Part shown: positions 59 to 41,961 of the stretch, in pieces
Layout of the letters: each line of letters opens with the position of its first letter
How positions within the stretch are numbered: position 1 is the stretch's first letter
IMG/VR virus record: IMGVR_UViG_3300027834_000005
Location: 1-64,000 of that record
DNA: 64,000 nucleotides
Direction: 5' to 3' (one strand)
Position numbers and translations under genes: made by a program
The notes under the pieces: generated by a model
The model's input: the letters and a program-made list of their open reading frames with translations, nothing else
Databases searched by the model: none
Told to the model about the DNA's origin: nothing

Positions 59-1069
59 GGACAAAGTACTACGCTGACAGGTCGCTGTATCACTAAGCAC
101 ATGACAGCTAAGACTAATGAGATTTTGACAGGCGAGTATGATCATGGTGGCGTAACAGCTATCTACAATGATACTGACTCAACTTACTTTAGTGCATACC
201 CTGTGATGAAGGAAGAGATGGATCAATGGCCGGTTGAGAAGACCATTAAGTTCTACGATGAATTAGGCGAAGCAGTGAATGACACGTTCATTCAGTACAT
301 GGAAGATTCATTTCATGTGCCACCTATGTACGGTGAAGTTATCGCGGCAGCACGTGAGATCGTTTCTAAGAAAGGTCTCTTCATCAAGAAGAAAAGATAT
401 GCAACCTTAGTTGTGGATAACGAAGGTAAACGTATGGATATAGGCGGGAAAATGGGTAAGGTAAAAGTTACCGGACTCGATCTGCGTAGATCTGATACAG
501 TTAAGTATATTCAGGGGTTCTTAATGAACGTTCTAACATTGTTACTGGAAGGTTACGAGGAAGACGACATTATCAGCTATATCATAGCTTTCAAGAAAGA
601 TCTTGAGAAAATGGACCCGTGGACTTGGGGTAGACCATCTTCTGCTAATAAGCTAACCCATTATGGGAAGGCTAAAGAAGATGAGCTATCACGTAAGCTT
701 TCAGGTATGGATGGCACCAAAGGCTTTACGATACCGTCTCATGTGGCCGGTGCATTAAACTGGAACGAATTGTTAGTCATGGCAAACGACATGGAAACGA
801 TGAAGATTCCTGATGGTGCTAAGGTTATGTCATTGCCTTTGATAGAGGGCGCTGATAATCCATATAGCAGGGTTAGTTACCCAGTTGATGAAACTAGACT
901 ACCTACGTGGTTCTTAGAGCTACCGTTCGATGTTGATGAAATGATGAAAACTAACATTGATAAGAAGGTTAATAACCTTTTGGGTATAATGAATTGGGAT
1001 TTGTCCAGAACGGATTTGGACAATGAAGCTTTCGAAGAAATGTTCGTATATGACGATGATGATTGTTGA
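38..1069 (+). CDS. Family B DNA polymerase, C-terminal part (N-terminal part not in this frame or window)
   Basis: Frame reads RFFDQRLGQSTTLTGRCITKHM (post motif B), then YNDTDS (motif C), KKKRYA and KVTGLDLRRSD; open upstream of ATG 101; in-frame TGA at 8-10. Confidence 0.9.
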   Translation, partial: RFFDQRLGQSTTLTGRCITKHMTAKTNEILTGEYDHGGVTAIYNDTDSTYFSAYPVMKEEMDQWPVEKTIKFYDELGEAVNDTFIQYMEDSFHVPPMYGEVIAAAREIVSKKGLFIKKKRYATLVVDNEGKRMDIGGKMGKVKVTGLDLRRSDTVKYIQGFLMNVLTLLLEGYEEDDIISYIIAFKKDLEKMDPWTWGRPSSANKLTHYGKAKEDELSRKLSGMDGTKGFTIPSHVAGALNWNELLVMANDMETMKIPDGAKVMSLPLIEGADNPYSRVSYPVDETRLPTWFLELPFDVDEMMKTNIDKKVNNLLGIMNWDLSRTDLDNEAFEEMFVYDDDDC

Positions 1070-3743: not shown

Positions 3744-4730
3744 ATGGCTAATTACATATTAGTAGATTACATGAATATGGCTCACCGAGCTAAAAATGCG
3801 ATGTTTAACAGCGATCTGGACACCCAGATAGGCATGTCTATGCATATCATGTTTAACAGCATCAGGAAGGTCCACAATCAGTTTAGTGGGGACCATGTCC
3901 TTATCTGTACTGAGGGTAGTTCATGGCGTAAGAAGTTCTATACTGGTTACAAAAAGAACCGAGTACTAAAGAACCTTCAAAAGACCGAAGCTGAGAGAGA
4001 AGATGATAAGATCTTCATGGAAGCTATTGATGACATGGCGGTATTCTTCAACGAGAAGACCAATGCCACAGTTCTCAATAATCCAGAGGCCGAGGCGGAT
4101 GATATGATTGCTTTGTTCATTCAGGCTCATCCAAACGACACACATTTTATCATTAGCTCTGATCAGGATTACATCCAGTGCTTAGCTGAGAACGTGACCA
4201 TTTATAATGGCGTGTCTGAAGAGGTAATCAGATTGGATGGTTACTTCGACATAAAGGGTAAGCCTATTAAGGATAAGAAAGGTGACATTAAGTTGACGCC
4301 ATTACCTGAATACTCTTTGTTTGAAAAGTGCATACGTGGAGATGTTTCTGATAACATTTTCACTGCCTACCCTAGAGTTAGGAAAAAAGGCACAAAGAAC
4401 AAAGTAGGTATCATAGAAGCGTTTGACGACAGGTTGAATAAAGGGTATGATTGGAACAACTTTATGCTAACCAAGTGGACTGACCCTAATGGGGTAGAAC
4501 ACGTGGTACAAGACAAGTATGAGTTTAACAAGAGACTTATTGACTTAACTATGCAACCGGCTGACATCAAAGATAGATGTTTGGTGAGTATGGCTGAGTC
4601 TTTGGCTGAACCGAGGAAATCAAACGTCGGTATCCATTTCTTGAAATTCTGCTCAGCATGGAACTTGGATAATCTTTCTAAATATCCTGATGACTTCGCC
4701 ACTATGCTTAACAAGCCATACGTGTACTAG
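3744..4730 (+). CDS. rnh: RNase H-like / FEN 5'-3' nuclease (T4 Rnh-like)
   Basis: YILVDYMN, EGSSWRK..Y..YK.NR, EAEADDMIA, SSDQDY and GDVSDNI motifs of the 5'-3' exonuclease family. Confidence 0.85.
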   Translation: MANYILVDYMNMAHRAKNAMFNSDLDTQIGMSMHIMFNSIRKVHNQFSGDHVLICTEGSSWRKKFYTGYKKNRVLKNLQKTEAEREDDKIFMEAIDDMAVFFNEKTNATVLNNPEAEADDMIALFIQAHPNDTHFIISSDQDYIQCLAENVTIYNGVSEEVIRLDGYFDIKGKPIKDKKGDIKLTPLPEYSLFEKCIRGDVSDNIFTAYPRVRKKGTKNKVGIIEAFDDRLNKGYDWNNFMLTKWTDPNGVEHVVQDKYEFNKRLIDLTMQPADIKDRCLVSMAESLAEPRKSNVGIHFLKFCSAWNLDNLSKYPDDFATMLNKPYVY

Positions 4731-7592: not shown

Positions 7593-8298
7593 TGTATTCA
7601 GTCATCAGATGATCTGTAATTGACTCGAATGGTGCTCTCAAATTTACTAACCTAAGTGAACATGCTAATAGCACATCACATAAAGTGTATAACTTTGATG
7701 GGTTTTTCTTGATCTTACCTGACGTGTTGATGTATAGGAACGTATCGCCCCTTACAGCAAACTTATACCTAACATGAAGTCTTGGTACTAGGTCACAGTT
7801 GTTCACTACTCGTATAAACTTAGAATTGCCTGCAGATGTCTTTTTCTTACAACTTCTGGCCTCACCAAAGGTATATACTGTAACGTTTTGTTCTTTAAAG
7901 CGTAAACCAAGTAACTTAGCTACTGACCCACCTAAAGAATGCCCAATGAAGAAAACTTTCTTATTGGTATGGTTGACAATTTCCGTAACATCCAATATGA
8001 TGTCCGTAACGCCTTCGTAGAACCCACTGTGTACTTCACCGACCTCTGGCATATATCTAACGTCAGTACCCCACACTTTTAATGTGTCTGCGAAGTCTTC
8101 GAACTCTTTACTACCACGTATTGTGAAAATTACATTTTCGTCATCTTCCAATACATAGCATTGAGTATTCATTACGTCTAGGAACTTATAGTCGTATTTA
8201 TGTTTACCGTTTTTTAGCTCTATGTCTGTTGTGCCGTGACTTGCAGCCGGATCACTATAAGCGAACCTCGCAATTGTTGCGGCGTCTAATATGTTCAT
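7573..8298 (-). CDS. Class 3 lipase / alpha-beta hydrolase
   Basis: TIRGS, VHSGF, GHSLGG nucleophile elbow, TFG, DLVP (Asp), DHLM (His); AAGGAG RBS before ATG 8298. Confidence 0.85.
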   Translation of the reverse strand: MNILDAATIARFAYSDPAASHGTTDIELKNGKHKYDYKFLDVMNTQCYVLEDDENVIFTIRGSKEFEDFADTLKVWGTDVRYMPEVGEVHSGFYEGVTDIILDVTEIVNHTNKKVFFIGHSLGGSVAKLLGLRFKEQNVTVYTFGEARSCKKKTSAGNSKFIRVVNNCDLVPRLHVRYKFAVRGDTFLYINTSGKIKKNPSKLYTLCDVLLACSLRLVNLRAPFESITDHLMTEYIRHLDE

Positions 8299-8323
8299 GT
8301 TGTATCTCCTTTTACTTATTAAG

Positions 8324-8331
8324 TATTTATC
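8324..8331 (-). promoter_or_regulatory. T4-like late promoter candidate for the lipase gene
   Basis: GATAAATA on the minus strand ~25 nt before ATG 8298. Confidence 0.55.
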
Positions 8332-8336
8332 TTCTA

Positions 8337-8365
8337 TTGACAATGCGTAAAAACCACCATATAAT
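8337..8365 (+). promoter_or_regulatory. sigma70-type promoter for the sigma-factor gene
   Basis: TTGACA-N17-TATAAT, perfect consensus. Confidence 0.85.
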
Positions 8366-8399
8366 AGCACAAATTGAAAAACTACACAAGAAGAGATTA

Positions 8400-9173
8400 A
8401 TGACGTACTCTGAGAAATATAAAATTCTAACCGACCTTTACTTCAACAAAGGCGACAAATCAGCACTCGATAAAATGCTCCAAATGGCACGTGGTGCTTT
8501 TTTCCGTGAAGCAAATAAGCATAGTATAGAACCTGACATTAAAGAAGAATTCGCACAAGATGCTATGGTGCAGATACTTGAAGCAGTAGAAGACTTTGAT
8601 TTTGAGAAGTCTGATAACTTCAGTGGTATTGTTGGTACTATAATCACTAGAAAAATGCACGCTATGCGGTTTAATGTTGCACATCCTAATGTACCAGCTC
8701 ACGCTAGAAAAAAGCTTACGAAATCTAAGCTTTTCGCAGAGTCTGATTATGGTAAGAAGGACGTGAAGGTTGGTACGGTAACACATTCCGCTGAAAGTAT
8801 AGCAGCAGCCAATGCCTTCCTTAATGTGCGAGTGGTGAGCACTGAAAAGAAAATGACTGAAGACGGCGATACCCTAGGCTCCATTTTACCTAGTGAGGCT
8901 CTTCAAGTAGACGAAGTTATGGAAGGGGATGAATCCAATAACGCCCTTGTTCATGTAATTAGTCTGCTGTCTGATAAAGAACAGAAAATGATTAAAGATC
9001 ACTTTGGCGACGGAATAACATATACCGATATTGCTAAAAGTGATGGTGTGTCCCCTCAAGCAGTACACCTTAGATACTTAAAAGTACTGAAGAAAGTGAA
9101 CGTTGCTCTCACAGAACGTGGTGAAAACTACGTAGATATGAGAGAATGCATTAATCAAGCTAAACTATTCTAG
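8400..9173 (+). CDS. Phage-encoded sigma-70-family factor (regions 2 and 4)
   Basis: Region 2-like EEFAQDAMVQILEAVEDFDFEKSDNFS; region 4 HTH LSDKEQKMI..HFGDGITYTDIAKSDGVSPQAVHL; start set at ATG 8400, downstream of the promoter. Confidence 0.8.
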   Translation: MTYSEKYKILTDLYFNKGDKSALDKMLQMARGAFFREANKHSIEPDIKEEFAQDAMVQILEAVEDFDFEKSDNFSGIVGTIITRKMHAMRFNVAHPNVPAHARKKLTKSKLFAESDYGKKDVKVGTVTHSAESIAAANAFLNVRVVSTEKKMTEDGDTLGSILPSEALQVDEVMEGDESNNALVHVISLLSDKEQKMIKDHFGDGITYTDIAKSDGVSPQAVHLRYLKVLKKVNVALTERGENYVDMRECINQAKLF

Positions 9174-9899: not shown

Positions 9900-11183
9900 A
9901 TGGGTAAGAAAGAAGCGAACGTAGCCGAGTACACTGAAGTATCACCAGCCAAAGCATCTGCCTACTTAGAGCATTGCATGAATGTAGGACGTCCTGTATT
10001 CCTTTGGGGTTCTCCAGGTATTGGTAAGTCTGACTTGGTAGAAGGCATTGCCGAACGCCAAGGCCGTAAAGTGATCGACATGCGTCTGATCTTAATGGGT
10101 CCAGAAGATCTTAAGGGTATCCCTTACTTCGACTCGAACGAAGGTACTATGCGCTGGGCACCATCAAGCGAATTGCCTGAAGTAGTTAACCAAGCCGACG
10201 TAGATGAGCAACAAGCGATTGTTGATATGTTTGCAGAAGCATTAGCGCTTATCACAGCAGATGAGACAATGGGTGCATTAGAACGTGTATCTCAGATCGA
10301 AATTGCGACTGGTAAATTGAAAGGTGCAGAAGCACGCCGTGACCGTTACCAAGGTTCGTTAGAATTCCAAGATGCTATCTTGTTCTTGGATGAAATGAAC
10401 TCTGCGCCACCATCAGTACAGGGTGCTGCATACCAGCTAACATTGAACCGTCGTGTTGGTGAATACAAACTGCCTGATGGCGTAAGCATCATCGCAGCCG
10501 GTAACAAAGATACGGATAAAGGTGTAACCTACCGTATGCCTACACCGCTTGCTAACCGTTTCATTCACTTATACATGGATGTTTCGTTTGAAGATTGGCA
10601 GCAATGGGCGATTAACGCTGGGGTTCACGCTGACGTGGTTGGTTTCTTAACCGCTCACCCAAGCAAGATCCACAAGTTTGATCCTAAGTCTGCGGACAAG
10701 GCGTTTGCAACACCACGCTCTTGGACTTTCGTTAGCCAGCTGTTAGAGCAAGACATGGATCACGAAATGGCACGTACTTTGATCGGCGGTACTATCGGTG
10801 AAGGTTTGGCAATCGAATTCATGCAACATCGTAAAGTTGCTGGTAAGATGCCTGCTCCAATGGACGTATTGTTGGGTAAGGTTAAAACACTGAATGTCAC
10901 TGACATCTCAGCGCGTTACTCTCTTACTATCAGCATGTGTTACTTGCTGAAAGAGATCCAAGGTCAAATCGCTGACGAAGCGAAGAAGACTGTAGATCAG
11001 AAGTTCTACTTGGAATGTTTCGATAATTACTTCGAGTTCCTTATGGAAGTGATGCAGGAAGAGATGGTAATCTTAGGTGCTACTACAGCATTGAAGACTT
11101 ACAAGTTACCGATTGATCGTAACAAGTCTCGTACCTTCAACAAGATGTTTCAAGAGTACGGAAAAATGGTGTTGAACACTTAG
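9900..11183 (+). CDS. MoxR-like AAA+ ATPase
   Basis: Walker A GSPGIGKS, Walker B ILFLDE, IIAAGN sensor, PLANRF arginine finger, TPRSW. Confidence 0.9.
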   Translation: MGKKEANVAEYTEVSPAKASAYLEHCMNVGRPVFLWGSPGIGKSDLVEGIAERQGRKVIDMRLILMGPEDLKGIPYFDSNEGTMRWAPSSELPEVVNQADVDEQQAIVDMFAEALALITADETMGALERVSQIEIATGKLKGAEARRDRYQGSLEFQDAILFLDEMNSAPPSVQGAAYQLTLNRRVGEYKLPDGVSIIAAGNKDTDKGVTYRMPTPLANRFIHLYMDVSFEDWQQWAINAGVHADVVGFLTAHPSKIHKFDPKSADKAFATPRSWTFVSQLLEQDMDHEMARTLIGGTIGEGLAIEFMQHRKVAGKMPAPMDVLLGKVKTLNVTDISARYSLTISMCYLLKEIQGQIADEAKKTVDQKFYLECFDNYFEFLMEVMQEEMVILGATTALKTYKLPIDRNKSRTFNKMFQEYGKMVLNT

Positions 11184-13157: not shown

Positions 13158-14372
13158 ATGGCTGCTAAATGTCCGACTCGACAGAAGTTAGTGAAGGCAC
13201 GTATCCAAATGTTAATGAATATGCCGTTCTTCGGTGTACTCGCAACGCATTTACAACTGAAAGAAATTGATGCCAAGTTCTGCCCTACGGCAGGTACTGA
13301 TGGTCGCTCTTTCTATTACAACAAGGACTTCATTGAAAGCCTTGATGATGAAGAGTGTAAATTCTTGTTTGCACATGAAGTTATGCATTGCTGCTATGAC
13401 CATATGGGTCGTCGTGGTCGTCGTGACGCGGACTTGTATAACCAAGCAGCTGATCACGTGATCAACTTGGAAATCACTGACCAGAACGTCGGTAAGCTTA
13501 TTAGCCGTCCAAACGACGATCCTGCTATGATCCCTTGCCATGATACTAAGTATCGCGGTATGTCATCTGATGAGGTCTATGAGATCTTATATGATGAACA
13601 AGAAAAGAACGGCGGCCAAGGCCAAGGTCATAGCTTCGATGTGCATTTCGATGCTGATAGCATGACTGATGAAGAAGCTGAAGAAGCAGGCATTGATAAA
13701 ATGACTGATGATGAGAAGAGCATGGTTCGTGATGCATTCCGTCAAGCGACTTTAGAAGCTGCTAAATCTGCCGGTGCTGAAAACGTGCCAAATGGCGTAC
13801 GTAGCATGATCGATGATCTTTTAGATCCACAAATGGATTGGCGTGAATGTTTGAATGCCAACATCCAAACGTTGGTTAAGAATGACTGGACTTACTCACG
13901 TCCTAACCGTCGTAATTCATCTCTTGGTGGCATCATCTTACCAGGTAATGACTTCGATGAAGCTGTGAGCGTTTGTTGCGCGATTGATACCTCTGGTTCG
14001 ATCTCTCATCAAATGATTCGTGAATTCTTGAGTGAAATCAAGGGTATCATGGAACAGTTCAAGCAGTTCGAAATCAAGATTTGGTGCTTCGACACGGATA
14101 CTTACACTATCTGGAATTACAACGAAGATAACGCCGATGATATGGATGAGTTCTTCCCAGAAGGCGGTGGTGGTACTGAGTTCATGGTGAACTGGGATCG
14201 CATGAAAGAAGAAGATATCGAGCCTGATCAATTCGTGATGTTCACGGATGGTTACCCTTACGGTAGCTGGGGTGAAGAAGAATATCAAGACAACATGGTT
14301 TTCTTGATCAGTGGTAACCCACGTCACGACATCGTTGCGCCGTTCGGCACTACTTTATATTACGACGACTAA
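13158..14372 (+). CDS. HEXXH metallopeptidase-like plus VWA domain protein (DUF2201-like)
   Basis: TAGTDG, FLFAHEVMH, acidic linker, MIDAS IDTSGS, GGGGT, MFTDG. Confidence 0.85.
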   Translation: MAAKCPTRQKLVKARIQMLMNMPFFGVLATHLQLKEIDAKFCPTAGTDGRSFYYNKDFIESLDDEECKFLFAHEVMHCCYDHMGRRGRRDADLYNQAADHVINLEITDQNVGKLISRPNDDPAMIPCHDTKYRGMSSDEVYEILYDEQEKNGGQGQGHSFDVHFDADSMTDEEAEEAGIDKMTDDEKSMVRDAFRQATLEAAKSAGAENVPNGVRSMIDDLLDPQMDWRECLNANIQTLVKNDWTYSRPNRRNSSLGGIILPGNDFDEAVSVCCAIDTSGSISHQMIREFLSEIKGIMEQFKQFEIKIWCFDTDTYTIWNYNEDNADDMDEFFPEGGGGTEFMVNWDRMKEEDIEPDQFVMFTDGYPYGSWGEEEYQDNMVFLISGNPRHDIVAPFGTTLYYDD

Positions 14373-22974: not shown

Positions 22975-23003
22975 TTGACAAAAACATTATGTTGTGGGAT
23001 AAT
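22975..23003 (+). promoter_or_regulatory. sigma70-type promoter
   Basis: TTGACA-N17-GATAAT. Confidence 0.65.
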
Positions 23004-23031
23004 ACGCAGCAAGAGACCAACGGGGTTTATA

Positions 23032-24966
23032 ATGATAGACATTAGTGAAAAGAAGAATAAGTTAGCATCTGCTTCTACTAATCTGAAGAAAAGATTCTTC
23101 GGTATTGATGATACAATTGATAAGATTATCGATAGTATTAGCGCATGGTATTTGTTCCCAGAGATTAGTACACGTCCTCAAATCGTGTGCCTTTGGGGTT
23201 TAACTGGAGTAGGTAAGACCGACTTGATCAGACAGCTATGTGCTGAGCTAGATGTAAGTTCTGACTTTGCTGAAATCCAGCTTGATGGCAACAAAAACGG
23301 TCAGCGCGACATTGGCGACATTTTAGCGCACACCACAATCACTCCTGAGTCTCATAGTGTTTTACTATTAGATGAAGTGCAGCGATTCAAGACCAAAGAC
23401 GAAGAAGGTCATGACCTGATGGAAGGCAATATGCAAGACATCTGGATGCTTCTTAGTGACGGTACGCTTGGCTCACGTAACTCCCTAAAGATCGATCTAA
23501 TGAACTTCTTGATGGAACTGAACTCTGACATCTATGCGGCAGAGAAACGCTCTAATAAGTCCTCTAAGGACGATAGTAATAGCGTTTCTGGTAGTGACGA
23601 AGCTGATATCACTGAAGAAGATGATGAAGACGACGATAGTCCGTTCTCATGGGGTAGAAAATATAATGCTAACCGCTTATATCGCTTCGATAACAGCACA
23701 CCGTTGGAAGAGTACATGCAAATGGACTATTACCAGCAACGTGACATGGTAACTGCTCTGTTAGCTGATACTAATACGTTTGTACCTAAGCCTTATCGTA
23801 AGATGCTTATTTTCATCTCCGGTAACTTGGATGAAGCATTCCACGTAGCGACAGATACAGCTGAATCTGAAATCAATGCTGATTTGGTGTACGAAGAGAC
23901 CAAGAAAGTAAATGTATTGGATATTAAGACTGCTCTACGTAGACGTTTTAAGCCAGAACAGATTGCTCGCTTCGGTAACAACTACATCATCTATCCTTCG
24001 CTTAATAAGAAAGCGTATGATAAGATCATTGAGCGAAGAATCAAAGACTTCACTAAGTCGGTGAATAAAGTCCTTAAAGGCAACGATATCAAAGTTAAGA
24101 TTACCAAGAACGTGAATACCATGTTGTATCAGAACGGTGTATATCCAGCACAAGGTGCACGTCCTATTTTGTCAACGATTGATAATTTCATCAATAACGT
24201 TATCCCTAAAGTGATCATTGCGTGTGATTCTAACGGTGTGACAGGTGAAGTGTCTCTTAGCTGCTCAGAGAAAGGCTTCGTGTCTTACAAGTGCGGTGAC
24301 TTAGAAGGTAAAGTGGCATTCGTAGGTGAGTTGGATAAGATTCGTGACAAGCAAAAAAGCAAGAAAAATCTTTCTGCTAAAGTAGCTGTACATGAAGCTG
24401 GTCATGCAGTATTACATTGCGTCGAATACGGGGTAGCACCTAAAGATGTGAAGATCAGCGTAGCTTCTTCATTCAATAACGGATTCGTGTATAACAGTGT
24501 TGTTCCTTCATCTAAGAAAGAGTTGGAAAGTTATGTTAAGTGTTGCTTCGGTGGCACAGCAGCTGAAGAGCTTGTGTTCGGTAAAGACAACGTTAGTAGC
24601 GGTGCCAGCTCCGACTTAGCTTCTGCTTCTGAGAAGATTGCTCTGATGATCCGATACTTAGGTATGGGACCAAACGACTCTAAAGTCATGGTGGGTGATC
24701 ACACTGACAAGCAAATCATCTGCACAAAAGAAACAGATGCTCAGATGAAGACGTTGTCGGCTTCTCTTATGAAAGACACGTCTGCGGTTCTTAGAGAGCA
24801 CGTTGATTTCTTAAAGGATGTCTCTAGAGAGTTATCTGCTAAGAAAGAACTATCCTCTAAGGATATGCGAGAAATCGCTAAACGTAATAACTTGGACATA
24901 TTGGCAGATGCCTCAGAAGACGATCATTATGGCTATAATGACGTATTCAACAAGTGGCTTTCGTAG
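23032..24966 (+). CDS. Soluble Clp-like AAA+ ATPase fused to M41 (FtsH-type) Zn-protease domain
   Basis: GLTGVGKT, LLLDE, GARP (ClpB D2-like); HEAGH, GGTAAEELVFG, SSGASSD (FtsH M41); no TM segment; start set at ATG 23032, downstream of the promoter. Confidence 0.8.
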   Translation: MIDISEKKNKLASASTNLKKRFFGIDDTIDKIIDSISAWYLFPEISTRPQIVCLWGLTGVGKTDLIRQLCAELDVSSDFAEIQLDGNKNGQRDIGDILAHTTITPESHSVLLLDEVQRFKTKDEEGHDLMEGNMQDIWMLLSDGTLGSRNSLKIDLMNFLMELNSDIYAAEKRSNKSSKDDSNSVSGSDEADITEEDDEDDDSPFSWGRKYNANRLYRFDNSTPLEEYMQMDYYQQRDMVTALLADTNTFVPKPYRKMLIFISGNLDEAFHVATDTAESEINADLVYEETKKVNVLDIKTALRRRFKPEQIARFGNNYIIYPSLNKKAYDKIIERRIKDFTKSVNKVLKGNDIKVKITKNVNTMLYQNGVYPAQGARPILSTIDNFINNVIPKVIIACDSNGVTGEVSLSCSEKGFVSYKCGDLEGKVAFVGELDKIRDKQKSKKNLSAKVAVHEAGHAVLHCVEYGVAPKDVKISVASSFNNGFVYNSVVPSSKKELESYVKCCFGGTAAEELVFGKDNVSSGASSDLASASEKIALMIRYLGMGPNDSKVMVGDHTDKQIICTKETDAQMKTLSASLMKDTSAVLREHVDFLKDVSRELSAKKELSSKDMREIAKRNNLDILADASEDDHYGYNDVFNKWLS

Positions 24967-25190
24967 TATATTTCCTATGCGTGATCTTATTAAACACCAT
25001 CGCCCTTACTGTGGCGGTTGGTGTTTTTTTGCGTTATAGGGATATAAAAAGGTGGAATAATGGGGTATGTAGAGAGTCAGGTAGAGATTGGATGTTGTTT
25101 AGGCTTGACATGAGTAATAATGCTTGGTACACTGATCTTCGTGGTAATGACATATACTTGAAACATTACAATCCTAGGAAATACGAATGA
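24954..25190 (+). CDS. Small membrane-anchored protein
   Basis: N-terminal TM; WNNGVCRESG. Confidence 0.6.
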   Translation: MAFVVYFLCVILLNTIALTVAVGVFLRYRDIKRWNNGVCRESGRDWMLFRLDMSNNAWYTDLRGNDIYLKHYNPRKYE

Positions 25191-27668: not shown

Positions 27669-27983
27669 ATGATTGTAGAAGGGAATCAGGAAAATTTTGA
27701 TGAAGAAGTTATGGGCCACCAAGGTGTGGTTCTTTTAGACTTCTATGCAGACTGGTGCGGTCCATGTAAAATGGTAATGCCAGTACTGGAAGACATCGCC
27801 GAGAGTGGCGAAGTAAAAGTAGTGAAAATAAACGTTGACGAAGCACCAGAAATGGTGGCAGAATACAACGTTCGTGGAGTACCTACTTTCCGTTTAGTAA
27901 GAGATGGTGAGTTGTTGGAAGCAATTGCTTCTGGCGGACAGACCAAAACAACTCTTACTGAATTTATTGACAATAATTTGTAA
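27669..27983 (+). CDS. trxA: Thioredoxin
   Basis: DFYADWCGPCK active site; VRGVPTF cis-Pro loop. Confidence 0.95.
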   Translation: MIVEGNQENFDEEVMGHQGVVLLDFYADWCGPCKMVMPVLEDIAESGEVKVVKINVDEAPEMVAEYNVRGVPTFRLVRDGELLEAIASGGQTKTTLTEFIDNNL

Positions 27984-28023
27984 CAGTTTTATAATGAAGT
28001 GAGAACCTGTAGGAGGGTTAACA

Positions 28024-28257: not shown

Positions 28258-28494
28258 ATGGTCATGGCAAGATTGCACGTTATATGCGGTAATTGTGGTA
28301 ACAACGAAGGGTTCAAGTATTCTATTGACCCGACAGGCAACTGCGACAATGATGGGAATAATTTTCCCAGTGTAGACATAACGTGTCCAAACTGTGCTAC
28401 TATGCACTTCTTAGGTGAAGACATGGGCATCCCAGAGGATGAAAAACATAAGTATCGACCAGATGAGAATGGTGAAGAAGATGAAAAAAAGTAA
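28258..28494 (+). CDS. Zn-ribbon protein
   Basis: CGNC ... CPNC. Confidence 0.65.
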   Translation: MVMARLHVICGNCGNNEGFKYSIDPTGNCDNDGNNFPSVDITCPNCATMHFLGEDMGIPEDEKHKYRPDENGEEDEKK

Positions 28495-29704
28495 TTTTAT
28501 TTATGACGGTTCAGCCGTCAATGGTATCAAACACTGGACCAAAGGTGTTGGTATGGAGCCACAAGCGTTACAGCAATTGATCAATGTTGCTAATATGCCT
28601 TTCATTCATAAGCACGTCGCGGCTATGCCAGACGTTCACTTTGGACGAGGAGCTACAATAGGATCAGTTATTGCAACCAAGGGTGCTATTATCCCTTCGG
28701 CAGTAGGCGTGGATATCGGATGCGGCATGATCGCAGTTCAAACCACGTTGAAAGCAGGTGATTTACCAGATAACTTGCGTACCATACGTAATGATATCGA
28801 AAGAGCAGTACCACATGGCTTTGTATCGATCTCTGGGCGCTCCCGTAAAGGTTCGTTTGAGGTTGCTCCACAGTCTGTTCTAACACGCTGGCGTACGTTG
28901 TCAGACGGGTATGAAACACTTGTAGCCAAACATGGCGATAAGATAGCTAAGAAAAACCCTCACGAGCAGCTAGGTACGCTTGGTGGAGGAAACCACTTCA
29001 TTGAAATCTGTTTGGATGAAAATGACTCGGTTTGGATCATGTTACACTCAGGCTCTCGTGGAGCTGGTAACTTGATCGGTCAGTATTTTATCGATAAGGC
29101 CAAAGAAGATATGGAGAGACGCCATATCGGCTTGGTTGACAGAGACCTGTCCTACTTGACAGAAGGCGACAAACTTTTTGAAGATTATACGGAAGCTTTG
29201 TTGTGGGCACAAGACTACGCATACGAAAACCGTCAAGCTATGCTTGATAACGTGTTAGGTGTGTTGAGAAATCACTTGAAGCCATTCCAGTTTGTGGAGC
29301 AGGCTATCAACTGCCACCATAACTACGCTTCCCAAGAGGTCCACTTCGGTGAGAACGTCTGGGTAACTCGTAAAGGTGCAGTTAGAGCACAAGTAGGGGA
29401 TTTGGGTATCATACCAGGTTCTATGGGCACTGGCTCCTTCATCGTTCGCGGTTTAGGTAGCAAGGAATCCTTCTGTTCATGTTCGCATGGGGCAGGACGT
29501 GTAATGTCACGTGGTGAGGCTAAACGCACAATCACTATGGCAGATCACGAGAAGGCTACAGCCGGTATAGAGTGTCGTAAAGACAAAGCTATATTGGATG
29601 AGTCACCAGCTGCTTATAAGGATATCTCGGCTGTAATGGCCGCACAGGATGACCTTGTAGAAGTTGTCCACAGACTACGACAAGTAGTTAACGTAAAAGG
29701 GTGA
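28481..29704 (+). CDS. rtcB: RtcB RNA ligase
   Basis: MPDVH.G.G..IG, VGVDIGCG, GTLGGGNHF, HSGSRG, NCHHN, RKGA, IPGSMG, SCSHGAGR, DESPAAYK. Confidence 0.95.
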   Translation: MKKSNFIYDGSAVNGIKHWTKGVGMEPQALQQLINVANMPFIHKHVAAMPDVHFGRGATIGSVIATKGAIIPSAVGVDIGCGMIAVQTTLKAGDLPDNLRTIRNDIERAVPHGFVSISGRSRKGSFEVAPQSVLTRWRTLSDGYETLVAKHGDKIAKKNPHEQLGTLGGGNHFIEICLDENDSVWIMLHSGSRGAGNLIGQYFIDKAKEDMERRHIGLVDRDLSYLTEGDKLFEDYTEALLWAQDYAYENRQAMLDNVLGVLRNHLKPFQFVEQAINCHHNYASQEVHFGENVWVTRKGAVRAQVGDLGIIPGSMGTGSFIVRGLGSKESFCSCSHGAGRVMSRGEAKRTITMADHEKATAGIECRKDKAILDESPAAYKDISAVMAAQDDLVEVVHRLRQVVNVKG

Positions 29705-29732: not shown

Positions 29733-29761
29733 TTGACAACATCACACATATCACCTATAAT
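29733..29761 (+). promoter_or_regulatory. sigma70-type promoter heading array B
   Basis: TTGACA-N17-TATAAT, perfect consensus. Confidence 0.85.
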
Positions 29762-36165: not shown

Positions 36166-36473
36166 TTTCACGACGTAAAATAACAAAAGCTGATTTGCAG
36201 CCATTCATTAAACTTGTGTGCGTTGCCACTGAACAAAACCAACATGTAAAATGCTCACATAAGTTGGGAGGCATATATAAAATAGGTCACCTAACAGCTG
36301 ATCACAGTTTATATATGGAAAGTGAGACGTATGATGGACTTACTACGTTCAATATAAACTACATACTAAACGAAGAAGACTCTGGATACACGAGAACATT
36401 CGTTCCTAAAGATTGGTTAACAGATAAAGAGATATTTTCTATATTACTAGGAGTGCCGTATGAATGTGATTGA
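36162..36473 (+). CDS. EDxF-tag protein, array B
   Basis: Tag LTDKEIFSILLG. Confidence 0.75.
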   Translation: MISRRKITKADLQPFIKLVCVATEQNQHVKCSHKLGGIYKIGHLTADHSLYMESETYDGLTTFNINYILNEEDSGYTRTFVPKDWLTDKEIFSILLGVPYECD

Positions 36474-36918
36474 TGGAAACTTAATACATATGGCCATAAA
36501 CGGTGACTTCGATGTTATGGTGCATGGCTGTAACTGTTTCGGTGCCATGGGTTCAGGCATAGCACGACAGGTCAAAGATACGTTCCCAGAAGCATACTCT
36601 GCGGACTTGGCAACTGAGAAAGGCGACTCATCTAAACTGGGCACATACAGCATAGCTACATACGATGACGCACTTACCGACTACGGCAAGTTACACGTTG
36701 TTAATGCATACACACAATACGCCTTCTGGAATGACGCTGACGTGGATTACGAAGCTATACGTTGGTGCTTCAAAGACATCAAAGAAGACTTTGGTGATCT
36801 TAGAGTGGCATACCCTTTAATAGGGTGCGGTTTGGCCGGTGGCGACTGGAACATTGTCAAGAACATTATTGACGAAGAAATGGGGACATCAACGCACACG
36901 CTAGTGAGATATAAATGA
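36460..36918 (+). CDS. Macrodomain protein (DarG-like ADP-ribosylhydrolase fold)
   Basis: VHGCNCFGAMGSGIARQVK; VVNAYTQ; PLIGCGLAGGDW. Confidence 0.85.
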   Translation: MNVIDGNLIHMAINGDFDVMVHGCNCFGAMGSGIARQVKDTFPEAYSADLATEKGDSSKLGTYSIATYDDALTDYGKLHVVNAYTQYAFWNDADVDYEAIRWCFKDIKEDFGDLRVAYPLIGCGLAGGDWNIVKNIIDEEMGTSTHTLVRYK

Positions 36919-37938: not shown

Positions 37939-38233
37939 GTTAAGCCTAGAAGAAATAAAGGTCGGTACGGATGTGCTATGTATACGTCCACATCCACGCG
38001 ATGGATGGATCACACATGGTAGGTTATACAATATAAATTACGTCAATAAAACGCTAAGTGTATTCGGTGTATCAGATGACGATAATGACCCTACGGACTA
38101 TTGCATATATGAAATGGAAGACATATTCAGTGACGACTTCTGTTATTACTCAGTAAGTGGGATACCCGAAGAGGAATTGTTTTTCATTAAACTAGGTGGT
38201 GTCACAGATTATGATATTATCGTTGACAACTAG
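37919..38233 (+). CDS. EDxF-tag protein, array B
   Basis: VGTDVLCI..THGRLYNI; tag IPEEELFFIKLGG. Confidence 0.8.
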   Translation: MTINVHKLSLEEIKVGTDVLCIRPHPRDGWITHGRLYNINYVNKTLSVFGVSDDDNDPTDYCIYEMEDIFSDDFCYYSVSGIPEEELFFIKLGGVTDYDIIVDN

Positions 38234-38251
38234 TTCATCATGTAGTATAAT
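38223..38251 (+). promoter_or_regulatory. sigma70-type promoter
   Basis: TTGACA-N17-TATAAT, perfect consensus. Confidence 0.85.
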
Positions 38252-39993: not shown

Positions 39994-41961
39994 ATGCAAG
40001 ATATGATAACTAGCCTCATCAGTAAAGGTAACTATGACGAATATGACATCGATGATGTCTGCGCCATGTTATTTACAGCCGACGACGAATATGAGATTGA
40101 TGGTGATCTTACATCGTTTGAGTTATCTGATGCTCAGTATGACGTTATCAAGTTCAATGCTAAGCGATTGGCACCAGCACACAAGTACTTCACTGGTGTT
40201 GGTTCTGACGTGCGTGGTGGCAAGATAGACCTACCCAATTACATGCCTTCACTTAACCAGATCGAAGTAGGCGACATTGGCCGCTGGATCATCGATAACA
40301 ATCTTCACCAAGAATGCATTGTTCTATCAGATAAGATGGATGGCGTATCAATTCAGCTTATATACAACGCTGATGGTTCTTTACGTATTGCATATTCTCG
40401 TGGTAACGGATTGAAGGGTGCAGACGTTACCCGACATGTTAGACGCATGAAGAAAGTGCCATTACAGATAGAACCAACTGGCAGTGTAGTTGAAATACGT
40501 GCCGAGGTGGAATTGTCCAATTCTATATTCGAAGAGTTGAAGACGCAAGTGTTTAAGTCTGATGGTTCCCCTTATAAGAACCCTCGTAACATGACTGCCG
40601 GTATGATGAACTCTTCTGAAGCTCACCAAGCCTTCTATGATGTGGTTGATGTGTTCACTTATGAAATCATGAACACCACTTTGGACAAACTAACCACTTT
40701 ACAACGCCTAGATGAGATGCGATTCACTGTGGTGTGTTACTGTGCTCTAGATGGTTGCGATCTAAATGACGATAAGCTTGCCGAATACCTTAATAGAAGA
40801 CGTAATGATATCGACTATGACATTGATGGTTTGGTGCTTACTGTGGATAGCTATATTGTTAGCGGTAAGTTAGACGTTGGTATGAAGGGCGCAGCTAACC
40901 CTAAGTCATCTATCAAGTACAAGGTGGCGGACGCATCCAATTATCACATGGCTACGTGTACTGGCGTGACATATAACGTGTCTAAACATGCATTCGGTAA
41001 GCCACAGATCAACTTGGAACCGTTTGACATTCAAGGGGTGACAGTATCCAACACTACCGGATTCAATGCGAAGTTCATCCACGACAATAACATTGGTGCT
41101 GGTGCTAAAATACTGATGACGCGCTCTGGTGATGTAATCCCTTACGTTGTTAAGGTGAGTGAAGGTGTTGAGACATGGGCACAGCCTGACGATGGATATG
41201 AGTACAAGTGGAACGACACAGCAGTAGACTTAGTGCTTGTTGACCCTGATTCTCATCCAACGGTACAGCTACGTCGCATGACTGACTTCTGTAACTCTCT
41301 GGAACTGCCCGTGTTAAGAGAAGGTAACGTCCAGAAGCTTATAACAGACGGCTACGACTCCGTAGAATCGATCCTGTTGGCTAGTAAGGAGCAACTGGTC
41401 CAAACGTTAGGGGCTAATGGTGAGAAGGCATACGACGGCATACACAAGCGTCTAAGTAACGTGAAGTATTACGAGATTGCTGGTTCAGTTCACGCCTTCG
41501 GACGTGGAGTAGGCAAGCGCAAGTTTGAAGATCTATTCGCCAGCGGTATTTTACCAATGGAGGAAGATGGCACCTATGACATGACTAAGCTCACAGTGTC
41601 TAAAATCATAGGCGTTAAAGGGTTCGAAGTGGTAACAGCAGAAAAAATCATGGAAGGACTTGACGAGTTCATGAACTTCTGGGATAATATATGTCACTTG
41701 GTACACATACCAACGCTCTCTAGTAGTGGCTCACTGAATGACGAGATGATCGTGTTCACTGGCTTCAGAGATAAAGACCTAAAGGCGGATGTTGAATCTG
41801 CTGGAGGGAAGATGCAATCGAGTGTCAATGGCAAAACAACTATACTAGTATGTCTTGATCCAACATCAACATCTGGTAAAGTTAAAAAAGCACGGGACAA
41901 GGGTGTTACTATCGTTAGCCCTGACGAAATTAAAGAACGAATCCTAATGGGGAATCTATAA
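39994..41961 (+). CDS. ligA: NAD-dependent DNA ligase
   Basis: Ia-like LSDAQYD, KMDG adenylation site, SRGNG, NPRN, DIDGLV, SGDVIP, C-terminal BRCT (IVFTG). Confidence 0.9.
   Translation: MQDMITSLISKGNYDEYDIDDVCAMLFTADDEYEIDGDLTSFELSDAQYDVIKFNAKRLAPAHKYFTGVGSDVRGGKIDLPNYMPSLNQIEVGDIGRWIIDNNLHQECIVLSDKMDGVSIQLIYNADGSLRIAYSRGNGLKGADVTRHVRRMKKVPLQIEPTGSVVEIRAEVELSNSIFEELKTQVFKSDGSPYKNPRNMTAGMMNSSEAHQAFYDVVDVFTYEIMNTTLDKLTTLQRLDEMRFTVVCYCALDGCDLNDDKLAEYLNRRRNDIDYDIDGLVLTVDSYIVSGKLDVGMKGAANPKSSIKYKVADASNYHMATCTGVTYNVSKHAFGKPQINLEPFDIQGVTVSNTTGFNAKFIHDNNIGAGAKILMTRSGDVIPYVVKVSEGVETWAQPDDGYEYKWNDTAVDLVLVDPDSHPTVQLRRMTDFCNSLELPVLREGNVQKLITDGYDSVESILLASKEQLVQTLGANGEKAYDGIHKRLSNVKYYEIAGSVHAFGRGVGKRKFEDLFASGILPMEEDGTYDMTKLTVSKIIGVKGFEVVTAEKIMEGLDEFMNFWDNICHLVHIPTLSSSGSLNDEMIVFTGFRDKDLKADVESAGGKMQSSVNGKTTILVCLDPTSTSGKVKKARDKGVTIVSPDEIKERILMGNL

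What the first reader, a model, noticed from the sequence alone, without database searches (positions are those of the whole stretch)
23032..24966. Soluble Clp-like AAA+/M41 protease fusion, a candidate partner for the tagged proteins
The ATPase half looks like a ClpB D2/ClpX-type module (GVGKT, LLLDE, GARP) rather than an FtsH ATPase. It is fused to an intact FtsH-type M41 domain (HEAGH; GGxAAEE) and has no TM anchor. It has its own sigma70 promoter and lies between tag-gene clusters. Hypothesis (inference only): the tagged proteins act as substrate adaptors or substrates for this phage protease, giving a targeted-degradation system against host proteins. The MoxR/VWA pair is an alternative hub.
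Basis: inference. Interest (0 to 1): 0.7.

Follow-up and report, generated by a model that had tools for sequence, protein, structure and literature searches.

The report
Soluble Clp-type/FtsH-type fusion protease
A marine jumbo phage encodes a membrane-free, ATP-driven zinc protease that joins a Clp-type motor to an FtsH-type cutting domain; it belongs to a large unstudied family found in giant phages and some bacteria, and nothing found here ties it to the phage's many 'tagged' small proteins.

Summary
Window 23032-24966 (+) encodes a 644-aa protein with no membrane segment. Its N-terminal AAA+ module is of the Clp/Hsp100-D2 type. Its C-terminal M41 (FtsH-type) peptidase has an intact HEAGH...E512...D528 zinc site. 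All ATPase catalytic residues are conserved across the family.

The gene has a near-consensus extended -10 sigma70 promoter and a terminator-like hairpin, and it lies among arrays of tag-bearing small genes.

New findings:
- It belongs to a large, unnamed family (about 850 clusters at 50% identity). Members occur in uncultivated jumbo phages and patchily in Bacteroidota and Burkholderiales. None was found in 50,697 deposited phage records.
- The canonical aromatic pore loop 1 (GYVG/FVG) is missing. A conserved loop at ClpX's pore-2 position and a roughly 110-aa helical/acidic insert are present instead.
- The reported jumbo-phage 'FtsH' (PA5oct/MIJ3) is a true membrane FtsH and shares only the M41 domain.

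The partner hypothesis is not supported. The own genome has 96 tag copies. Twenty-six large protease-bearing phage records and four bacterial genomes have no tag expansion. Tags accompany the protease only in its closest relatives (54-60% identity). The tag models as part of a folded domain. The complex prediction gave no answer.

Verdict: a new variant of a known kind, of moderate interest.

The parts
22975..23003 (+). Sigma70-type promoter: -35 TTGACA (22975-22980), 17-nt spacer, TG extension (22995-22996), -10 GATAAT (22998-23003)
   Evidence: 11 of 12 matches, the best site in 21-27 kb; sequence read directly; this class of site is enriched on the coding strand, 88 against 6.7 +/- 2.8 in shuffles.
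23032..24966 (+). CDS, 644 aa plus stop: soluble AAA+ (Clp-D2-type) / M41 metalloprotease fusion. A weak GGGG Shine-Dalgarno-like run lies at 23023-23026.
23197..23220 (+). Walker A, GLTGVGKT (aa 56-63)
   Evidence: T58, G59 and T63 are invariant and K62 is at least 90% conserved in 117 sequences.
23281..23310 (+). Position of pore loop 1 (aa 84-93, LDGNKNGQRD): short, with no aromatic residue
   Evidence: ClpC's 'RLVGSPPGYVGYDE' has no counterpart here; 1 of 117 members has Ar-h-Gly; the window clade has no aromatic here, while 70 of 117 members keep one 3-5 residues before I/L94.
23362..23376 (+). Walker B, LLLDE (aa 111-115)
   Evidence: D114 and E115 are invariant.
23380..23436 (+). Conserved loop after Walker B (aa 117-135, Q-R-F119-K-T-K-D-E-E-G...), at the position of ClpX's pore-2 loop
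   Evidence: Q117 100%, F/Y119 99%, G126 86%. The positional analogy to ClpX is from knowledge, not tested.
23464..23799 (+). Insert of about 110 aa before sensor 1 (aa 145-256): long helix 149-182, acidic low-confidence stretch 183-206, helices 207-250
   Evidence: secondary structure and pLDDT; 46% D+E in 183-206; variable charged region in all members
23815..23838 (+). Sensor 1 strand, ISGNLDEA (N265 invariant)
23947..23976 (+). FKPEQIARFG, the counterpart of Clp 'FRPEFLNRID'; R313 is the putative arginine finger (invariant)
24001..24231 (+). ClpB_D2-small lid domain (aa 324-400) with sensor 2 QGARP (aa 374-378, nt 24151-24165)
24238..24327 (+). Small three-stranded beta linker (aa 403-432) between the ATPase and the protease
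24364..24963 (+). M41 peptidase domain (aa 445-644): HEAGH 454-458 (nt 24391-24405), E512, and putative third zinc ligand D528 (nt 24613-24615)
   Evidence: E 6e-17; FtsH structures, E 2.6e-29; H454, E455, H458, D528 invariant
24999..25028 (+). Terminator-like hairpin (stem 24999-25018) with a T-rich tail, 33 nt after the stop codon
   Evidence: This is a consensus match only; the number of such sites in the region is not above shuffles.

Best explanation
The gene encodes a cytosolic, single-chain ATP-dependent zinc metalloprotease. It is built like Lon, with an HCLR-clade AAA+ motor followed by a protease in one polypeptide, but it uses FtsH's M41 peptidase.

Shown here:
- The ATPase is of the Clp/Hsp100-D2 type. 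Walker A and B, sensor 1, the Arg finger and sensor 2 are all conserved.
- The M41 zinc site is intact.
- There is no membrane anchor.
- The gene has its own near-consensus host-type promoter and lies in the promoter-rich first third of the genome.
- It belongs to a large family shared by uncultivated jumbo phages and some bacteria, with no conserved neighbour gene.

Inferred:
- It forms an FtsH/Lon-like hexamer in which the M41 ring makes a degradation chamber under the ATPase ring.
- Host RNA polymerase makes it early in infection.
- It degrades soluble host and/or phage proteins, as general or regulatory proteome remodelling.
- The canonical aromatic pore-1 loop is absent, so substrate engagement probably uses other elements. 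Candidates are the conserved Q-R-F119...G126 loop at the pore-2 position and/or the roughly 110-aa helical/acidic insert as a docking platform.

The conserved function of the family does not involve the tag-bearing small proteins.
For: Architecture: Pfam, NCBIfam and PDB sequence matches. The AF2 model has pLDDT 91.7 and pTM 0.87. Its whole chain aligns to FtsH/YME1 and its ATPase part to ClpB NBD2 at TM 0.61-0.66.

Active-site integrity: T58, G59, T63, D114, E115, N265, R313, R377, H454, E455, H458 and D528 are invariant in 117 sequences at about 33% identity; K62 and E512 are at least 90% conserved.

Soluble.

Own transcription unit.

Family size and spread: more than 1,190 full-length hits; 850 representatives at E <= 1e-30; 94 IMG/VR loci on contigs up to 548 kb; at least 528 hits in species genomes, including cultured Chryseobacterium, Arcicella, Polaromonas and Mitsuaria; Atlas clusters of Uroviricota, Bacteroidota and Pseudomonadota.

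Stand-alone gene: no neighbour is conserved across 160 loci. It is the only M41 gene in the phage.

Not a ClpP partner: no IG[FL] motif is visible between sensor 1 and the Arg finger (sequence read).
Against: No biochemical or expression data exist, and no RNA run was listed.

The hexamer could not be modelled because of size limits.

The window protein and its five closest relatives have no aromatic residue at all at the pore-1 position. A processive unfoldase mechanism is therefore uncertain.

The substrates are unknown.

Early timing rests on promoter consensus only.
Confidence: 0.7

Rival explanations
1. The roughly 96 tag-bearing small proteins are substrates or adaptors of this protease, and the conserved C-terminal motif is the recognition element. 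Together they would form a targeted-degradation system, or a timed clearance of early proteins.
For: The gene sits inside the tag arrays. Both lie in the region rich in sigma70-type promoters. The two closest relatives' contigs carry both features. The tag is strongly non-random: 79 of 528 proteins against 7.1 +/- 2.6 in shuffles.
Against: Twenty-six large protease-bearing phage records have no tag expansion: 25 have no match and one has a single weak 14.6-bit match. Four protease-bearing bacterial genomes have none. So the protease does not need tags. Co-occurrence is confined to one lineage, where descent explains it. The tag is usually internal to the C-terminal region, starting a median of 21 aa from the end, and it models as a folded strand plus helix. 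The complex prediction gave no answer.
Confidence: 0.1
2. The ATPase is not a threading motor. It acts as a nucleotide-dependent switch or assembly module that gates a site-specific M41 protease. The enzyme would cleave particular native proteins rather than unfold and degrade them.
For: The canonical pore loop 1 is absent family-wide, with only 1 of 117 members carrying Ar-h-Gly. The window clade has no aromatic there at all. A large insert could serve as a regulatory or docking domain.
Against: All ATP-hydrolysis residues are strictly conserved. Seventy of 117 members keep an aromatic near the pore-1 position, and the pore-2-position loop is nearly invariant. Every characterised AAA+ fused to M41 or to the Lon protease is a translocase (established knowledge).
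Confidence: 0.15
3. It is a virion-assembly or maturation factor. It would process or remove scaffold and head proteins, possibly together with the MoxR/VWA-metallopeptidase pair encoded 9-13 kb upstream.
For: Jumbo phages carry chaperone and peptidase sets for assembly, and the MoxR-vWA-metallopeptidase pair has been proposed for that role (PMC7824862). That pair is present in this window. The syntenic relative L004 also has Cpn10 nearby.
Against: The gene lies in the early-type, promoter-rich region among replication and accessory genes, not among structural genes. Free-living bacteria keep homologues in ordinary chromosomal contexts. There is no conserved linkage to MoxR/VWA across loci.
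Confidence: 0.05

Closest known systems
FtsH / YME1 / AFG3L2 (M41 AAA proteases)
   Same: It has a homologous M41 peptidase domain with HExxH, the structural Glu and the Asp zinc ligand. The order, ATPase then protease in one chain, is the same. The whole-chain fold matches.
   Different: There are no transmembrane helices and no periplasmic domain. The ATPase is not classic-clade: FtsH ATPase domains score about 0 bits against the family profile, there is no AAA_lid_3, and there is no FVG pore loop. The NCBIfam FtsH score is 51.9 against a cut-off of 600.
Clp/Hsp100 second nucleotide-binding domain (ClpB, ClpA, ClpC, ClpE D2)
   Same: Shared features are the GxTGVGKT Walker A, the 'LLSDG' counterpart of LLQxLDDG, the FKPEQIARFG counterpart of FRPEFLNRID, the GARP sensor 2, and the ClpB_D2-small lid over its cut-off. 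The protein starts where a D2 module starts.
   Different: It has a single ATPase ring and no D1 or N-domain. The GYVG pore loop is deleted. A 110-aa insert lies before sensor 1. The segment after Walker B is longer and ClpX-like. No ClpP-docking loop was seen. It is fused to its own protease.
Lon protease
   Same: The design principle is the same: a soluble HCLR-clade AAA+ motor fused N-terminal to a protease domain in one polypeptide. There is a weak Lon match at the N-terminus of the ATPase.
   Different: The protease is a zinc M41 domain, not the Ser-Lys S16 domain. There is no Lon N-terminal domain.
'FtsH-like' protein of jumbo phages MIJ3 and PA5oct (PMC6892783)
   Same: It is a jumbo-phage-encoded AAA+/M41 protease, and the M41 domains are homologous (hhalign probability 98.8%).
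   Different: The PA5oct protein is a canonical membrane FtsH with FtsH_ext, classic AAA (E 3e-42), AAA_lid_3 and M41. Its ATPase does not align with this family.

Membership tests
Peptidase family M41 (Pfam PF01434) | Domain match above the curated cut-off | tested here: met
   62.5 bits against a cut-off of 29.9, covering profile positions 9-191 of 191. The family profile matches FtsH structures at E 2.6e-29.
Peptidase family M41 (Pfam PF01434) | HExxH zinc motif plus a downstream Asp ligand and a structural Glu | tested here: met
   H454, E455, H458 and D528 are invariant, and E512 is at least 90% conserved, in 117 sequences. The assignment of D528 as a ligand is by alignment to FtsH 'GASxD'.
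FtsH proper (NCBIfam TIGR01241) | N-terminal transmembrane helices with a periplasmic domain | tested here: not met
   The maximum hydropathy is 1.20. The protein starts directly with the ATPase module.
FtsH proper (NCBIfam TIGR01241) | Classic-clade AAA domain (PF00004 plus AAA_lid_3) with an FVG pore loop | tested here: not met
   FtsH ATPase domains score -2.7 to 0.1 bits against the family profile. hhalign to PA5oct FtsH aligns only M41. There is no Ar-h-Gly motif.
FtsH proper (NCBIfam TIGR01241) | Whole-protein score above the equivalog cut-off | tested here: not met
   51.9 bits against a cut-off of 600.
Clp/Hsp100 D2-type AAA+ module | Walker A GxTGVGKT, Walker B hhhhDE, sensor 1 Asn, Arg finger in FRPE-like motif, sensor 2 GARP | tested here: met
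Clp/Hsp100 D2-type AAA+ module | ClpB_D2-small lid domain above the cut-off | tested here: met
   30.6 bits against a cut-off of 21.9.
Clp/Hsp100 D2-type AAA+ module | GYVG aromatic pore-1 loop | tested here: not met
   The segment is deleted relative to wild-type ClpC. The window protein has no aromatic in aa 84-93.
Clp/Hsp100 D2-type AAA+ module | Orthology to ClpA/ClpB/ClpX (equivalog cut-offs); AAA_2 above its cut-off | tested here: not met
   ClpA scores 57 against 993, ClpB 48.6 against 1232 and ClpX 14.9 against 359. AAA_2 scores 21.5 against 27.
ClpP-dependent unfoldases (ClpX/ClpA/ClpC) | IGF/IGL-type ClpP-docking loop | tested here: not met
   No IG[FL] motif appears between sensor 1 and the Arg finger in the sequence or the consensus. 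This was a sequence reading only. The phage's ClpP gene lies 280 kb away.
Known anti-phage defence systems (PADLOC) | Significant full-length match to a defence-system model | tested here: not met
   There are only partial P-loop matches (DolB at 1.4e-7 over aa 7-85).
AAA+ protease hexamer | Ring-shaped homohexamer with an enclosed proteolytic chamber | not testable with these tools
   A hexamer of 644-aa chains exceeds the complex-prediction size limit.

The most novel reading that the evidence does not exclude
This is an uncharacterised class of soluble ATP-dependent metalloprotease: a Clp-D2-type motor on an M41 chamber that engages substrates without a canonical pore-1 loop. It would be ancient in jumbo phages and passed to Bacteroidota and Burkholderiales. 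In this marine phage lineage it would have been co-opted to recognise the shared C-terminal strand-helix element of the roughly 96 paralogous early proteins. It would use them either as timed-degradation substrates or as a diversified adaptor library that delivers host targets.
Probability: 0.08. Interest if true: 0.85.

Novelty: new variant of a known kind. Interest (0 to 1): 0.5.

Why it matters
Bacterial ATP-dependent proteases are usually counted as a handful of designs: ClpXP, ClpAP/ClpCP, HslUV, Lon, FtsH and the proteasome. This family combines the motor type of one with the protease of another. It has lost the membrane anchor and the textbook substrate-gripping loop. Even so, it is abundant, with hundreds of sequence clusters in uncultivated jumbo phages and in common environmental bacteria such as Chryseobacterium.

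It offers a tractable soluble system for asking how an AAA+ protease works without a canonical pore-1 loop. It also gives a concrete entry point to how giant phages remodel the proteome of the infected cell.

For the scan, the result separates a correct molecular call from an attractive but unsupported link to the tag expansion. The tag expansion remains an unexplained feature in its own right.

Tried and rejected
1. Deposited phages. megablast of the locus and tblastn of the protein and of a central family member (P0027) found no homologue. No cultured phage is available as a model.
2. A single-protein scan of IMG/VR found nothing. The alignment-based scan was needed.
3. Conserved partner gene. 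Clustering 3,617 neighbour ORFs from 163 loci gave no family-wide neighbour. The recurrent ones belong to one phage subclade at variable distances.
4. Defence-system membership. PADLOC gave only P-loop fragments.
5. Prophage or mobile-island origin of the bacterial copies. The contexts look chromosomal (IMPDH, HflX, glycosyltransferase), but the gene is patchy, in 19 of 61 species of one genus.
6. Reverse co-occurrence test. The tag profile was too degenerate for an IMG/VR scan. A tighter sub-alignment gave 36 pattern matches, none confirmed. tblastn of two tag proteins against deposited phages gave nothing relevant.
7. Protease plus tag-protein complex prediction scored 0.00, 'no answer'. It is not used as evidence.
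8. Tag-protein identity. Nothing convincing came from Pfam or PHROGs: one 7.8e-06 match to an unknown-function PHROG, otherwise E > 0.003. The fold search gave only weak SH3/KOW-like hits with E > 0.01.
9. My first claim, that the family as a whole has no aromatic at pore loop 1, was too strong and was corrected. Seventy of 117 members keep an aromatic 3-5 residues before I/L94, and only the window clade has none.
10. RNA evidence: none was listed.
Full report
WHAT IS THERE

The frame is open from 22975 to 24966 on the + strand. The true start is ATG 23032, for two reasons. Homologues start at that residue. The upstream 'TTG' is the -35 hexamer of a promoter, TTGACA, 17 nt, TG-n-GATAAT, at 22975-23003. 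That site has 11 of 12 matches, is the best in the 21-27 kb region and ends 29 nt before the ATG. A terminator-like hairpin follows the stop codon at 24999-25018.

Promoter-like sites of this strength are a real class in this genome. There are 88 on the coding strand, 10 on the other strand, and 6.7 +/- 2.8 in shuffles. Forty-three lie within 60 nt of a gene start, and 57 lie in the first 116 kb. The gene therefore looks like a monocistronic unit transcribed by host RNA polymerase in the early-type part of the genome.

The genome is an IMG/VR virus record of 347,232 bp with an estimated completeness of 94%. It comes from a marine metagenome.

DOMAIN ARCHITECTURE

Pfam finds AAA (aa 52-129), ClpB_D2-small (324-398, above its cut-off) and Peptidase_M41 (449-615, E 6e-17). 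NCBIfam and PDB sequence searches give the same split. The C-terminal third matches FtsH. The remainder matches the second ATPase domain of ClpA, ClpB, ClpC and ClpE.

I tested the claim 'Clp-type, not FtsH-type ATPase' in three ways.
- A profile of 117 family members matches FtsH structures at E 2.6e-29, but only over M41. The FtsH ATPase domains score -2.7 to 0.1 bits. ClpE, ClpC and ClpB D2 score E 1e-12 to 1e-14.
- The motifs are those of Clp D2: GxTGVGKT; LLSDG for LLQxLDDG; FKPEQIARFG for FRPEFLNRID; QGARP for GARP.
- A genuine phage FtsH (PA5oct) aligns to the family profile only in M41 (hhalign probability 98.8%, residues 436-610).

The AlphaFold2 model is confident (pLDDT 91.7, pTM 0.87). 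Its whole chain superposes on FtsH/YME1. Its ATPase part superposes on ClpB NBD2 with TM 0.61-0.66. There is no hydrophobic segment; the maximum 19-residue hydropathy is 1.20.

CATALYTIC INTEGRITY

In 117 sequences averaging about 33% identity to the window protein, the following are invariant:
- T58, G59 and T63 in Walker A, where K62 is at least 90% conserved
- D114 and E115 in Walker B
- N265, sensor 1
- R313, the Arg finger
- R377, sensor 2
- H454, E455 and H458 in HExxH
- D528, the putative third zinc ligand, assigned by alignment to FtsH

E512 is at least 90% conserved. Both the ATPase and the peptidase are therefore expected to be active.

WHAT IS UNUSUAL IN THE MOTOR

1. Pore loop 1. 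Clp has GYVG and FtsH has FVG between strand beta2 and helix alpha2. The window protein has the 10-residue loop LDGNKNGQRD there. In pairwise HMMER alignments the stretch 'RLVGSPPGYVGYDE' of wild-type ClpC has no counterpart, and the best match is a ClpC sequence (3pxi) that itself lacks that stretch. Across the family the loop is 9-25 residues long and rich in Ser, Gly, Asn and Lys. Only 1 of 117 members has an aromatic-hydrophobic-Gly motif. I first read this as a complete family-wide loss and then corrected it. Seventy of 117 members keep an aromatic residue 3-5 positions before the conserved I/L94. The window protein and its five closest relatives have none.

2. The segment after Walker B. 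Q117-R-F119-[RK]-T-[IV]-D-E-x-G126 is nearly invariant (Q117 100%, F/Y119 99%). It lies where ClpX carries its pore-2 loop. That positional analogy comes from knowledge of ClpX and was not tested here.

3. An insert of about 110 residues (aa 145-256) precedes the sensor-1 strand. It has a long helix, an acidic low-confidence stretch (46% Asp+Glu in 183-206) and further helices.

4. A three-stranded linker (aa 403-432) joins the ATPase lid to M41.

5. No IG[FL] ClpP-docking motif is visible. The phage's ClpP gene lies 280 kb away.

HOW WIDESPREAD IT IS

The protein is not a one-off.
- A word-indexed search found more than 1,190 full-length homologues of 620-700 aa.
- An exhaustive HMMER scan of 1.84 billion representatives found 850 clusters at E <= 1e-30.
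- IMG/VR holds at least 94 loci, many on contigs of 200-548 kb with terminal repeats. Metagenome contigs reach 686 and 859 kb with phage-like gene content.
- Species genomes hold at least 528 hits. These include cultured Chryseobacterium, Arcicella, Polaromonas and Mitsuaria on megabase-scale contigs in ordinary chromosomal contexts.
- Within one genus, 19 of 61 species genomes carry a single copy, so in bacteria it is a patchy accessory gene.
- In a FastTree phylogeny of 145 sequences the viral copies are deep and diverse. Sixty-nine bacterial sequences, mostly Bacteroidota, form one supported clade. Six betaproteobacterial (mostly Burkholderiales) sequences nest among viral ones. The window protein sits in a fully supported clade of seven, next to another viral contig. 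The root is unknown and long branches are many, so I do not claim a direction of transfer.
- None of 50,697 deposited phage genomes has a homologue.
- AlphaFold DB and the ESM Atlas hold the family only under automatic names or none.
- Four literature searches found no description of it. A survey of 224 cultured jumbo phages does not mention FtsH or M41.
- The one reported jumbo-phage 'FtsH-like' gene (MIJ3/PA5oct, PMC6892783) is a canonical membrane FtsH (FtsH_ext, classic AAA, AAA_lid_3, M41).

THE TAG HYPOTHESIS

The tag is real. It is a motif h-[ST]-[DE]-E-[DE]-x-F-x-h-x-L-[SGK].
- It occurs in 79 of 528 predicted proteins, against 7.1 +/- 2.6 in shuffles.
- A profile of it finds 96 places in the genome, all on the + strand, at 15.8-84 kb and 201-225 kb.
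- It is attached to different N-terminal parts: an SH3/KOW-like barrel, MORN-like repeats and others.

It does not travel with the protease.
- Twenty-six large protease-bearing viral records, 19 of them at least 90% complete, show no tag expansion. Twenty-five have no match at all, and one has a single weak 14.6-bit match.
- Four whole bacterial genomes with the protease have none.
- None of 163 loci has a tag ORF within 10 kb of the protease.
- Tags are found beside the protease only on the contigs of its closest relatives. L004 (54% identity) has tandem MORN-like genes ending '...VDEKDKFVIALETGGKWLC'. L165 (60% identity) has '...LTDEEKFLYHVGG...'. Common descent explains that.

The tag also does not look like a degron. 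It starts a median of 21 residues from the C-terminus. In an AlphaFold2 model of a 94-aa member (pLDDT 80.7) it forms a strand and a helix, and these are the most confident part of the fold.

A complex prediction of the protease with a tag protein scored 0.00, which the tool rates as 'no answer'. I do not count it either way.

I found no tag-bearing genome outside the close clade, so that test remains open.

A lineage-specific co-option cannot be excluded. I put it at about 0.1.

MOST LIKELY MECHANISM

By homology with FtsH and by analogy with Lon, the protein should form a hexamer in which the M41 domains build a proteolytic chamber below the ATPase ring. It should use ATP to feed soluble proteins into that chamber.

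- Shown: both active sites are intact, the protein is soluble, and it has its own promoter.
- Inferred: the hexamer, the early timing, and the role in remodelling the host or phage proteome.
- Main mechanistic uncertainty: the missing pore-1 aromatic. Either another element grips the substrate (the F119 loop or the insert), or the ATPase acts as a switch for a more specific protease.

No conserved neighbour points to an adaptor.

VERDICT

The molecular interpretation is right and the partner hypothesis is unsupported. The protein is a new variant of a known kind, a Clp-D2-type motor fused to an M41 protease. It is abundant but unstudied, and of moderate interest to specialists in AAA+ proteases and jumbo phages.

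Noticed in passing
window 15800-64000, continuing to about 84 kb and 201-225 kb of the same genome: There is an expansion of about 96 small genes (about 90-190 aa), all on the + strand. They share a C-terminal motif h-[ST]-[DE]-E-[DE]-x-F-x-h-x-L-[SGK] on different N-terminal parts (SH3/KOW-like barrel, MORN-like repeats, others). Pfam and PHROGs give nothing convincing, and no deposited phage or other IMG/VR contig has a counterpart. Its function is unexplained, and it is the more unusual feature of this window.
   Followed up: partly
whole genome G000; window examples 22975-23003, 27967-27995, 29733-29761, 38223-38251: Near-consensus sigma70 promoters (at least 11 of 12 matches) are 13-fold enriched on the coding strand: 88 against 6.7 in shuffles, with only 10 on the other strand. 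They concentrate in the first 116 kb. This suggests a large early region read by host RNA polymerase, and a host with TTGACA/TATAAT promoters rather than the Bacteroidota type.
   Followed up: partly
window 9900-11183 and 13158-14372: A MoxR-type AAA+ ATPase lies near a DUF2201_N metallopeptidase fused to a VWA-like domain. This is the chaperone/co-chaperone pair described for group 2.2 jumbo phages (PMC7824862). It is syntenic in the relative L004.
   Followed up: partly
window 8229-9173: A 314-aa ORF has a weak Sigma70 region 2 match (E 1e-4, below the cut-off). It is possibly a phage sigma factor.
   Followed up: no
window 101-1069, 3744-4730, 28439-29704, 39994-41961: These are replication and repair accessory genes: a family B DNA polymerase fragment (only part of the profile, perhaps a split polymerase), a 5'-3' exonuclease, an RtcB RNA ligase and an NAD-dependent DNA ligase with BRCT.
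   Followed up: no
G000 303643-304218 (outside the window): A strong ClpP homologue (PF00574, 193 bits) is encoded 280 kb from the M41 fusion. It could be a real ClpP or a ClpP-like prohead protease.
   Followed up: no
window 36460-36918: A 152-aa ORF embedded in the tag array lacks the tag. By eye ('HGCNCFGAMGSGIA') it resembles a macro (ADP-ribose-binding or -hydrolase) domain. This was not tested with any tool.
   Followed up: no
L106 6835-7923, and the same position in about 12 other Chryseobacterium loci: In Chryseobacterium a DUF4407 gene lies directly upstream of the protease homologue on the same strand. This is genus-level synteny only and is not seen elsewhere.
   Followed up: partly
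ESM Atlas clusters (structure rows 5-7): ATPase-only relatives (about 410-490 aa, AAA plus ClpB_D2-small, no M41) exist in Bacteroidota and in viruses. They are possible precursors or split forms of the fusion and a possible outgroup for rooting.
   Followed up: no
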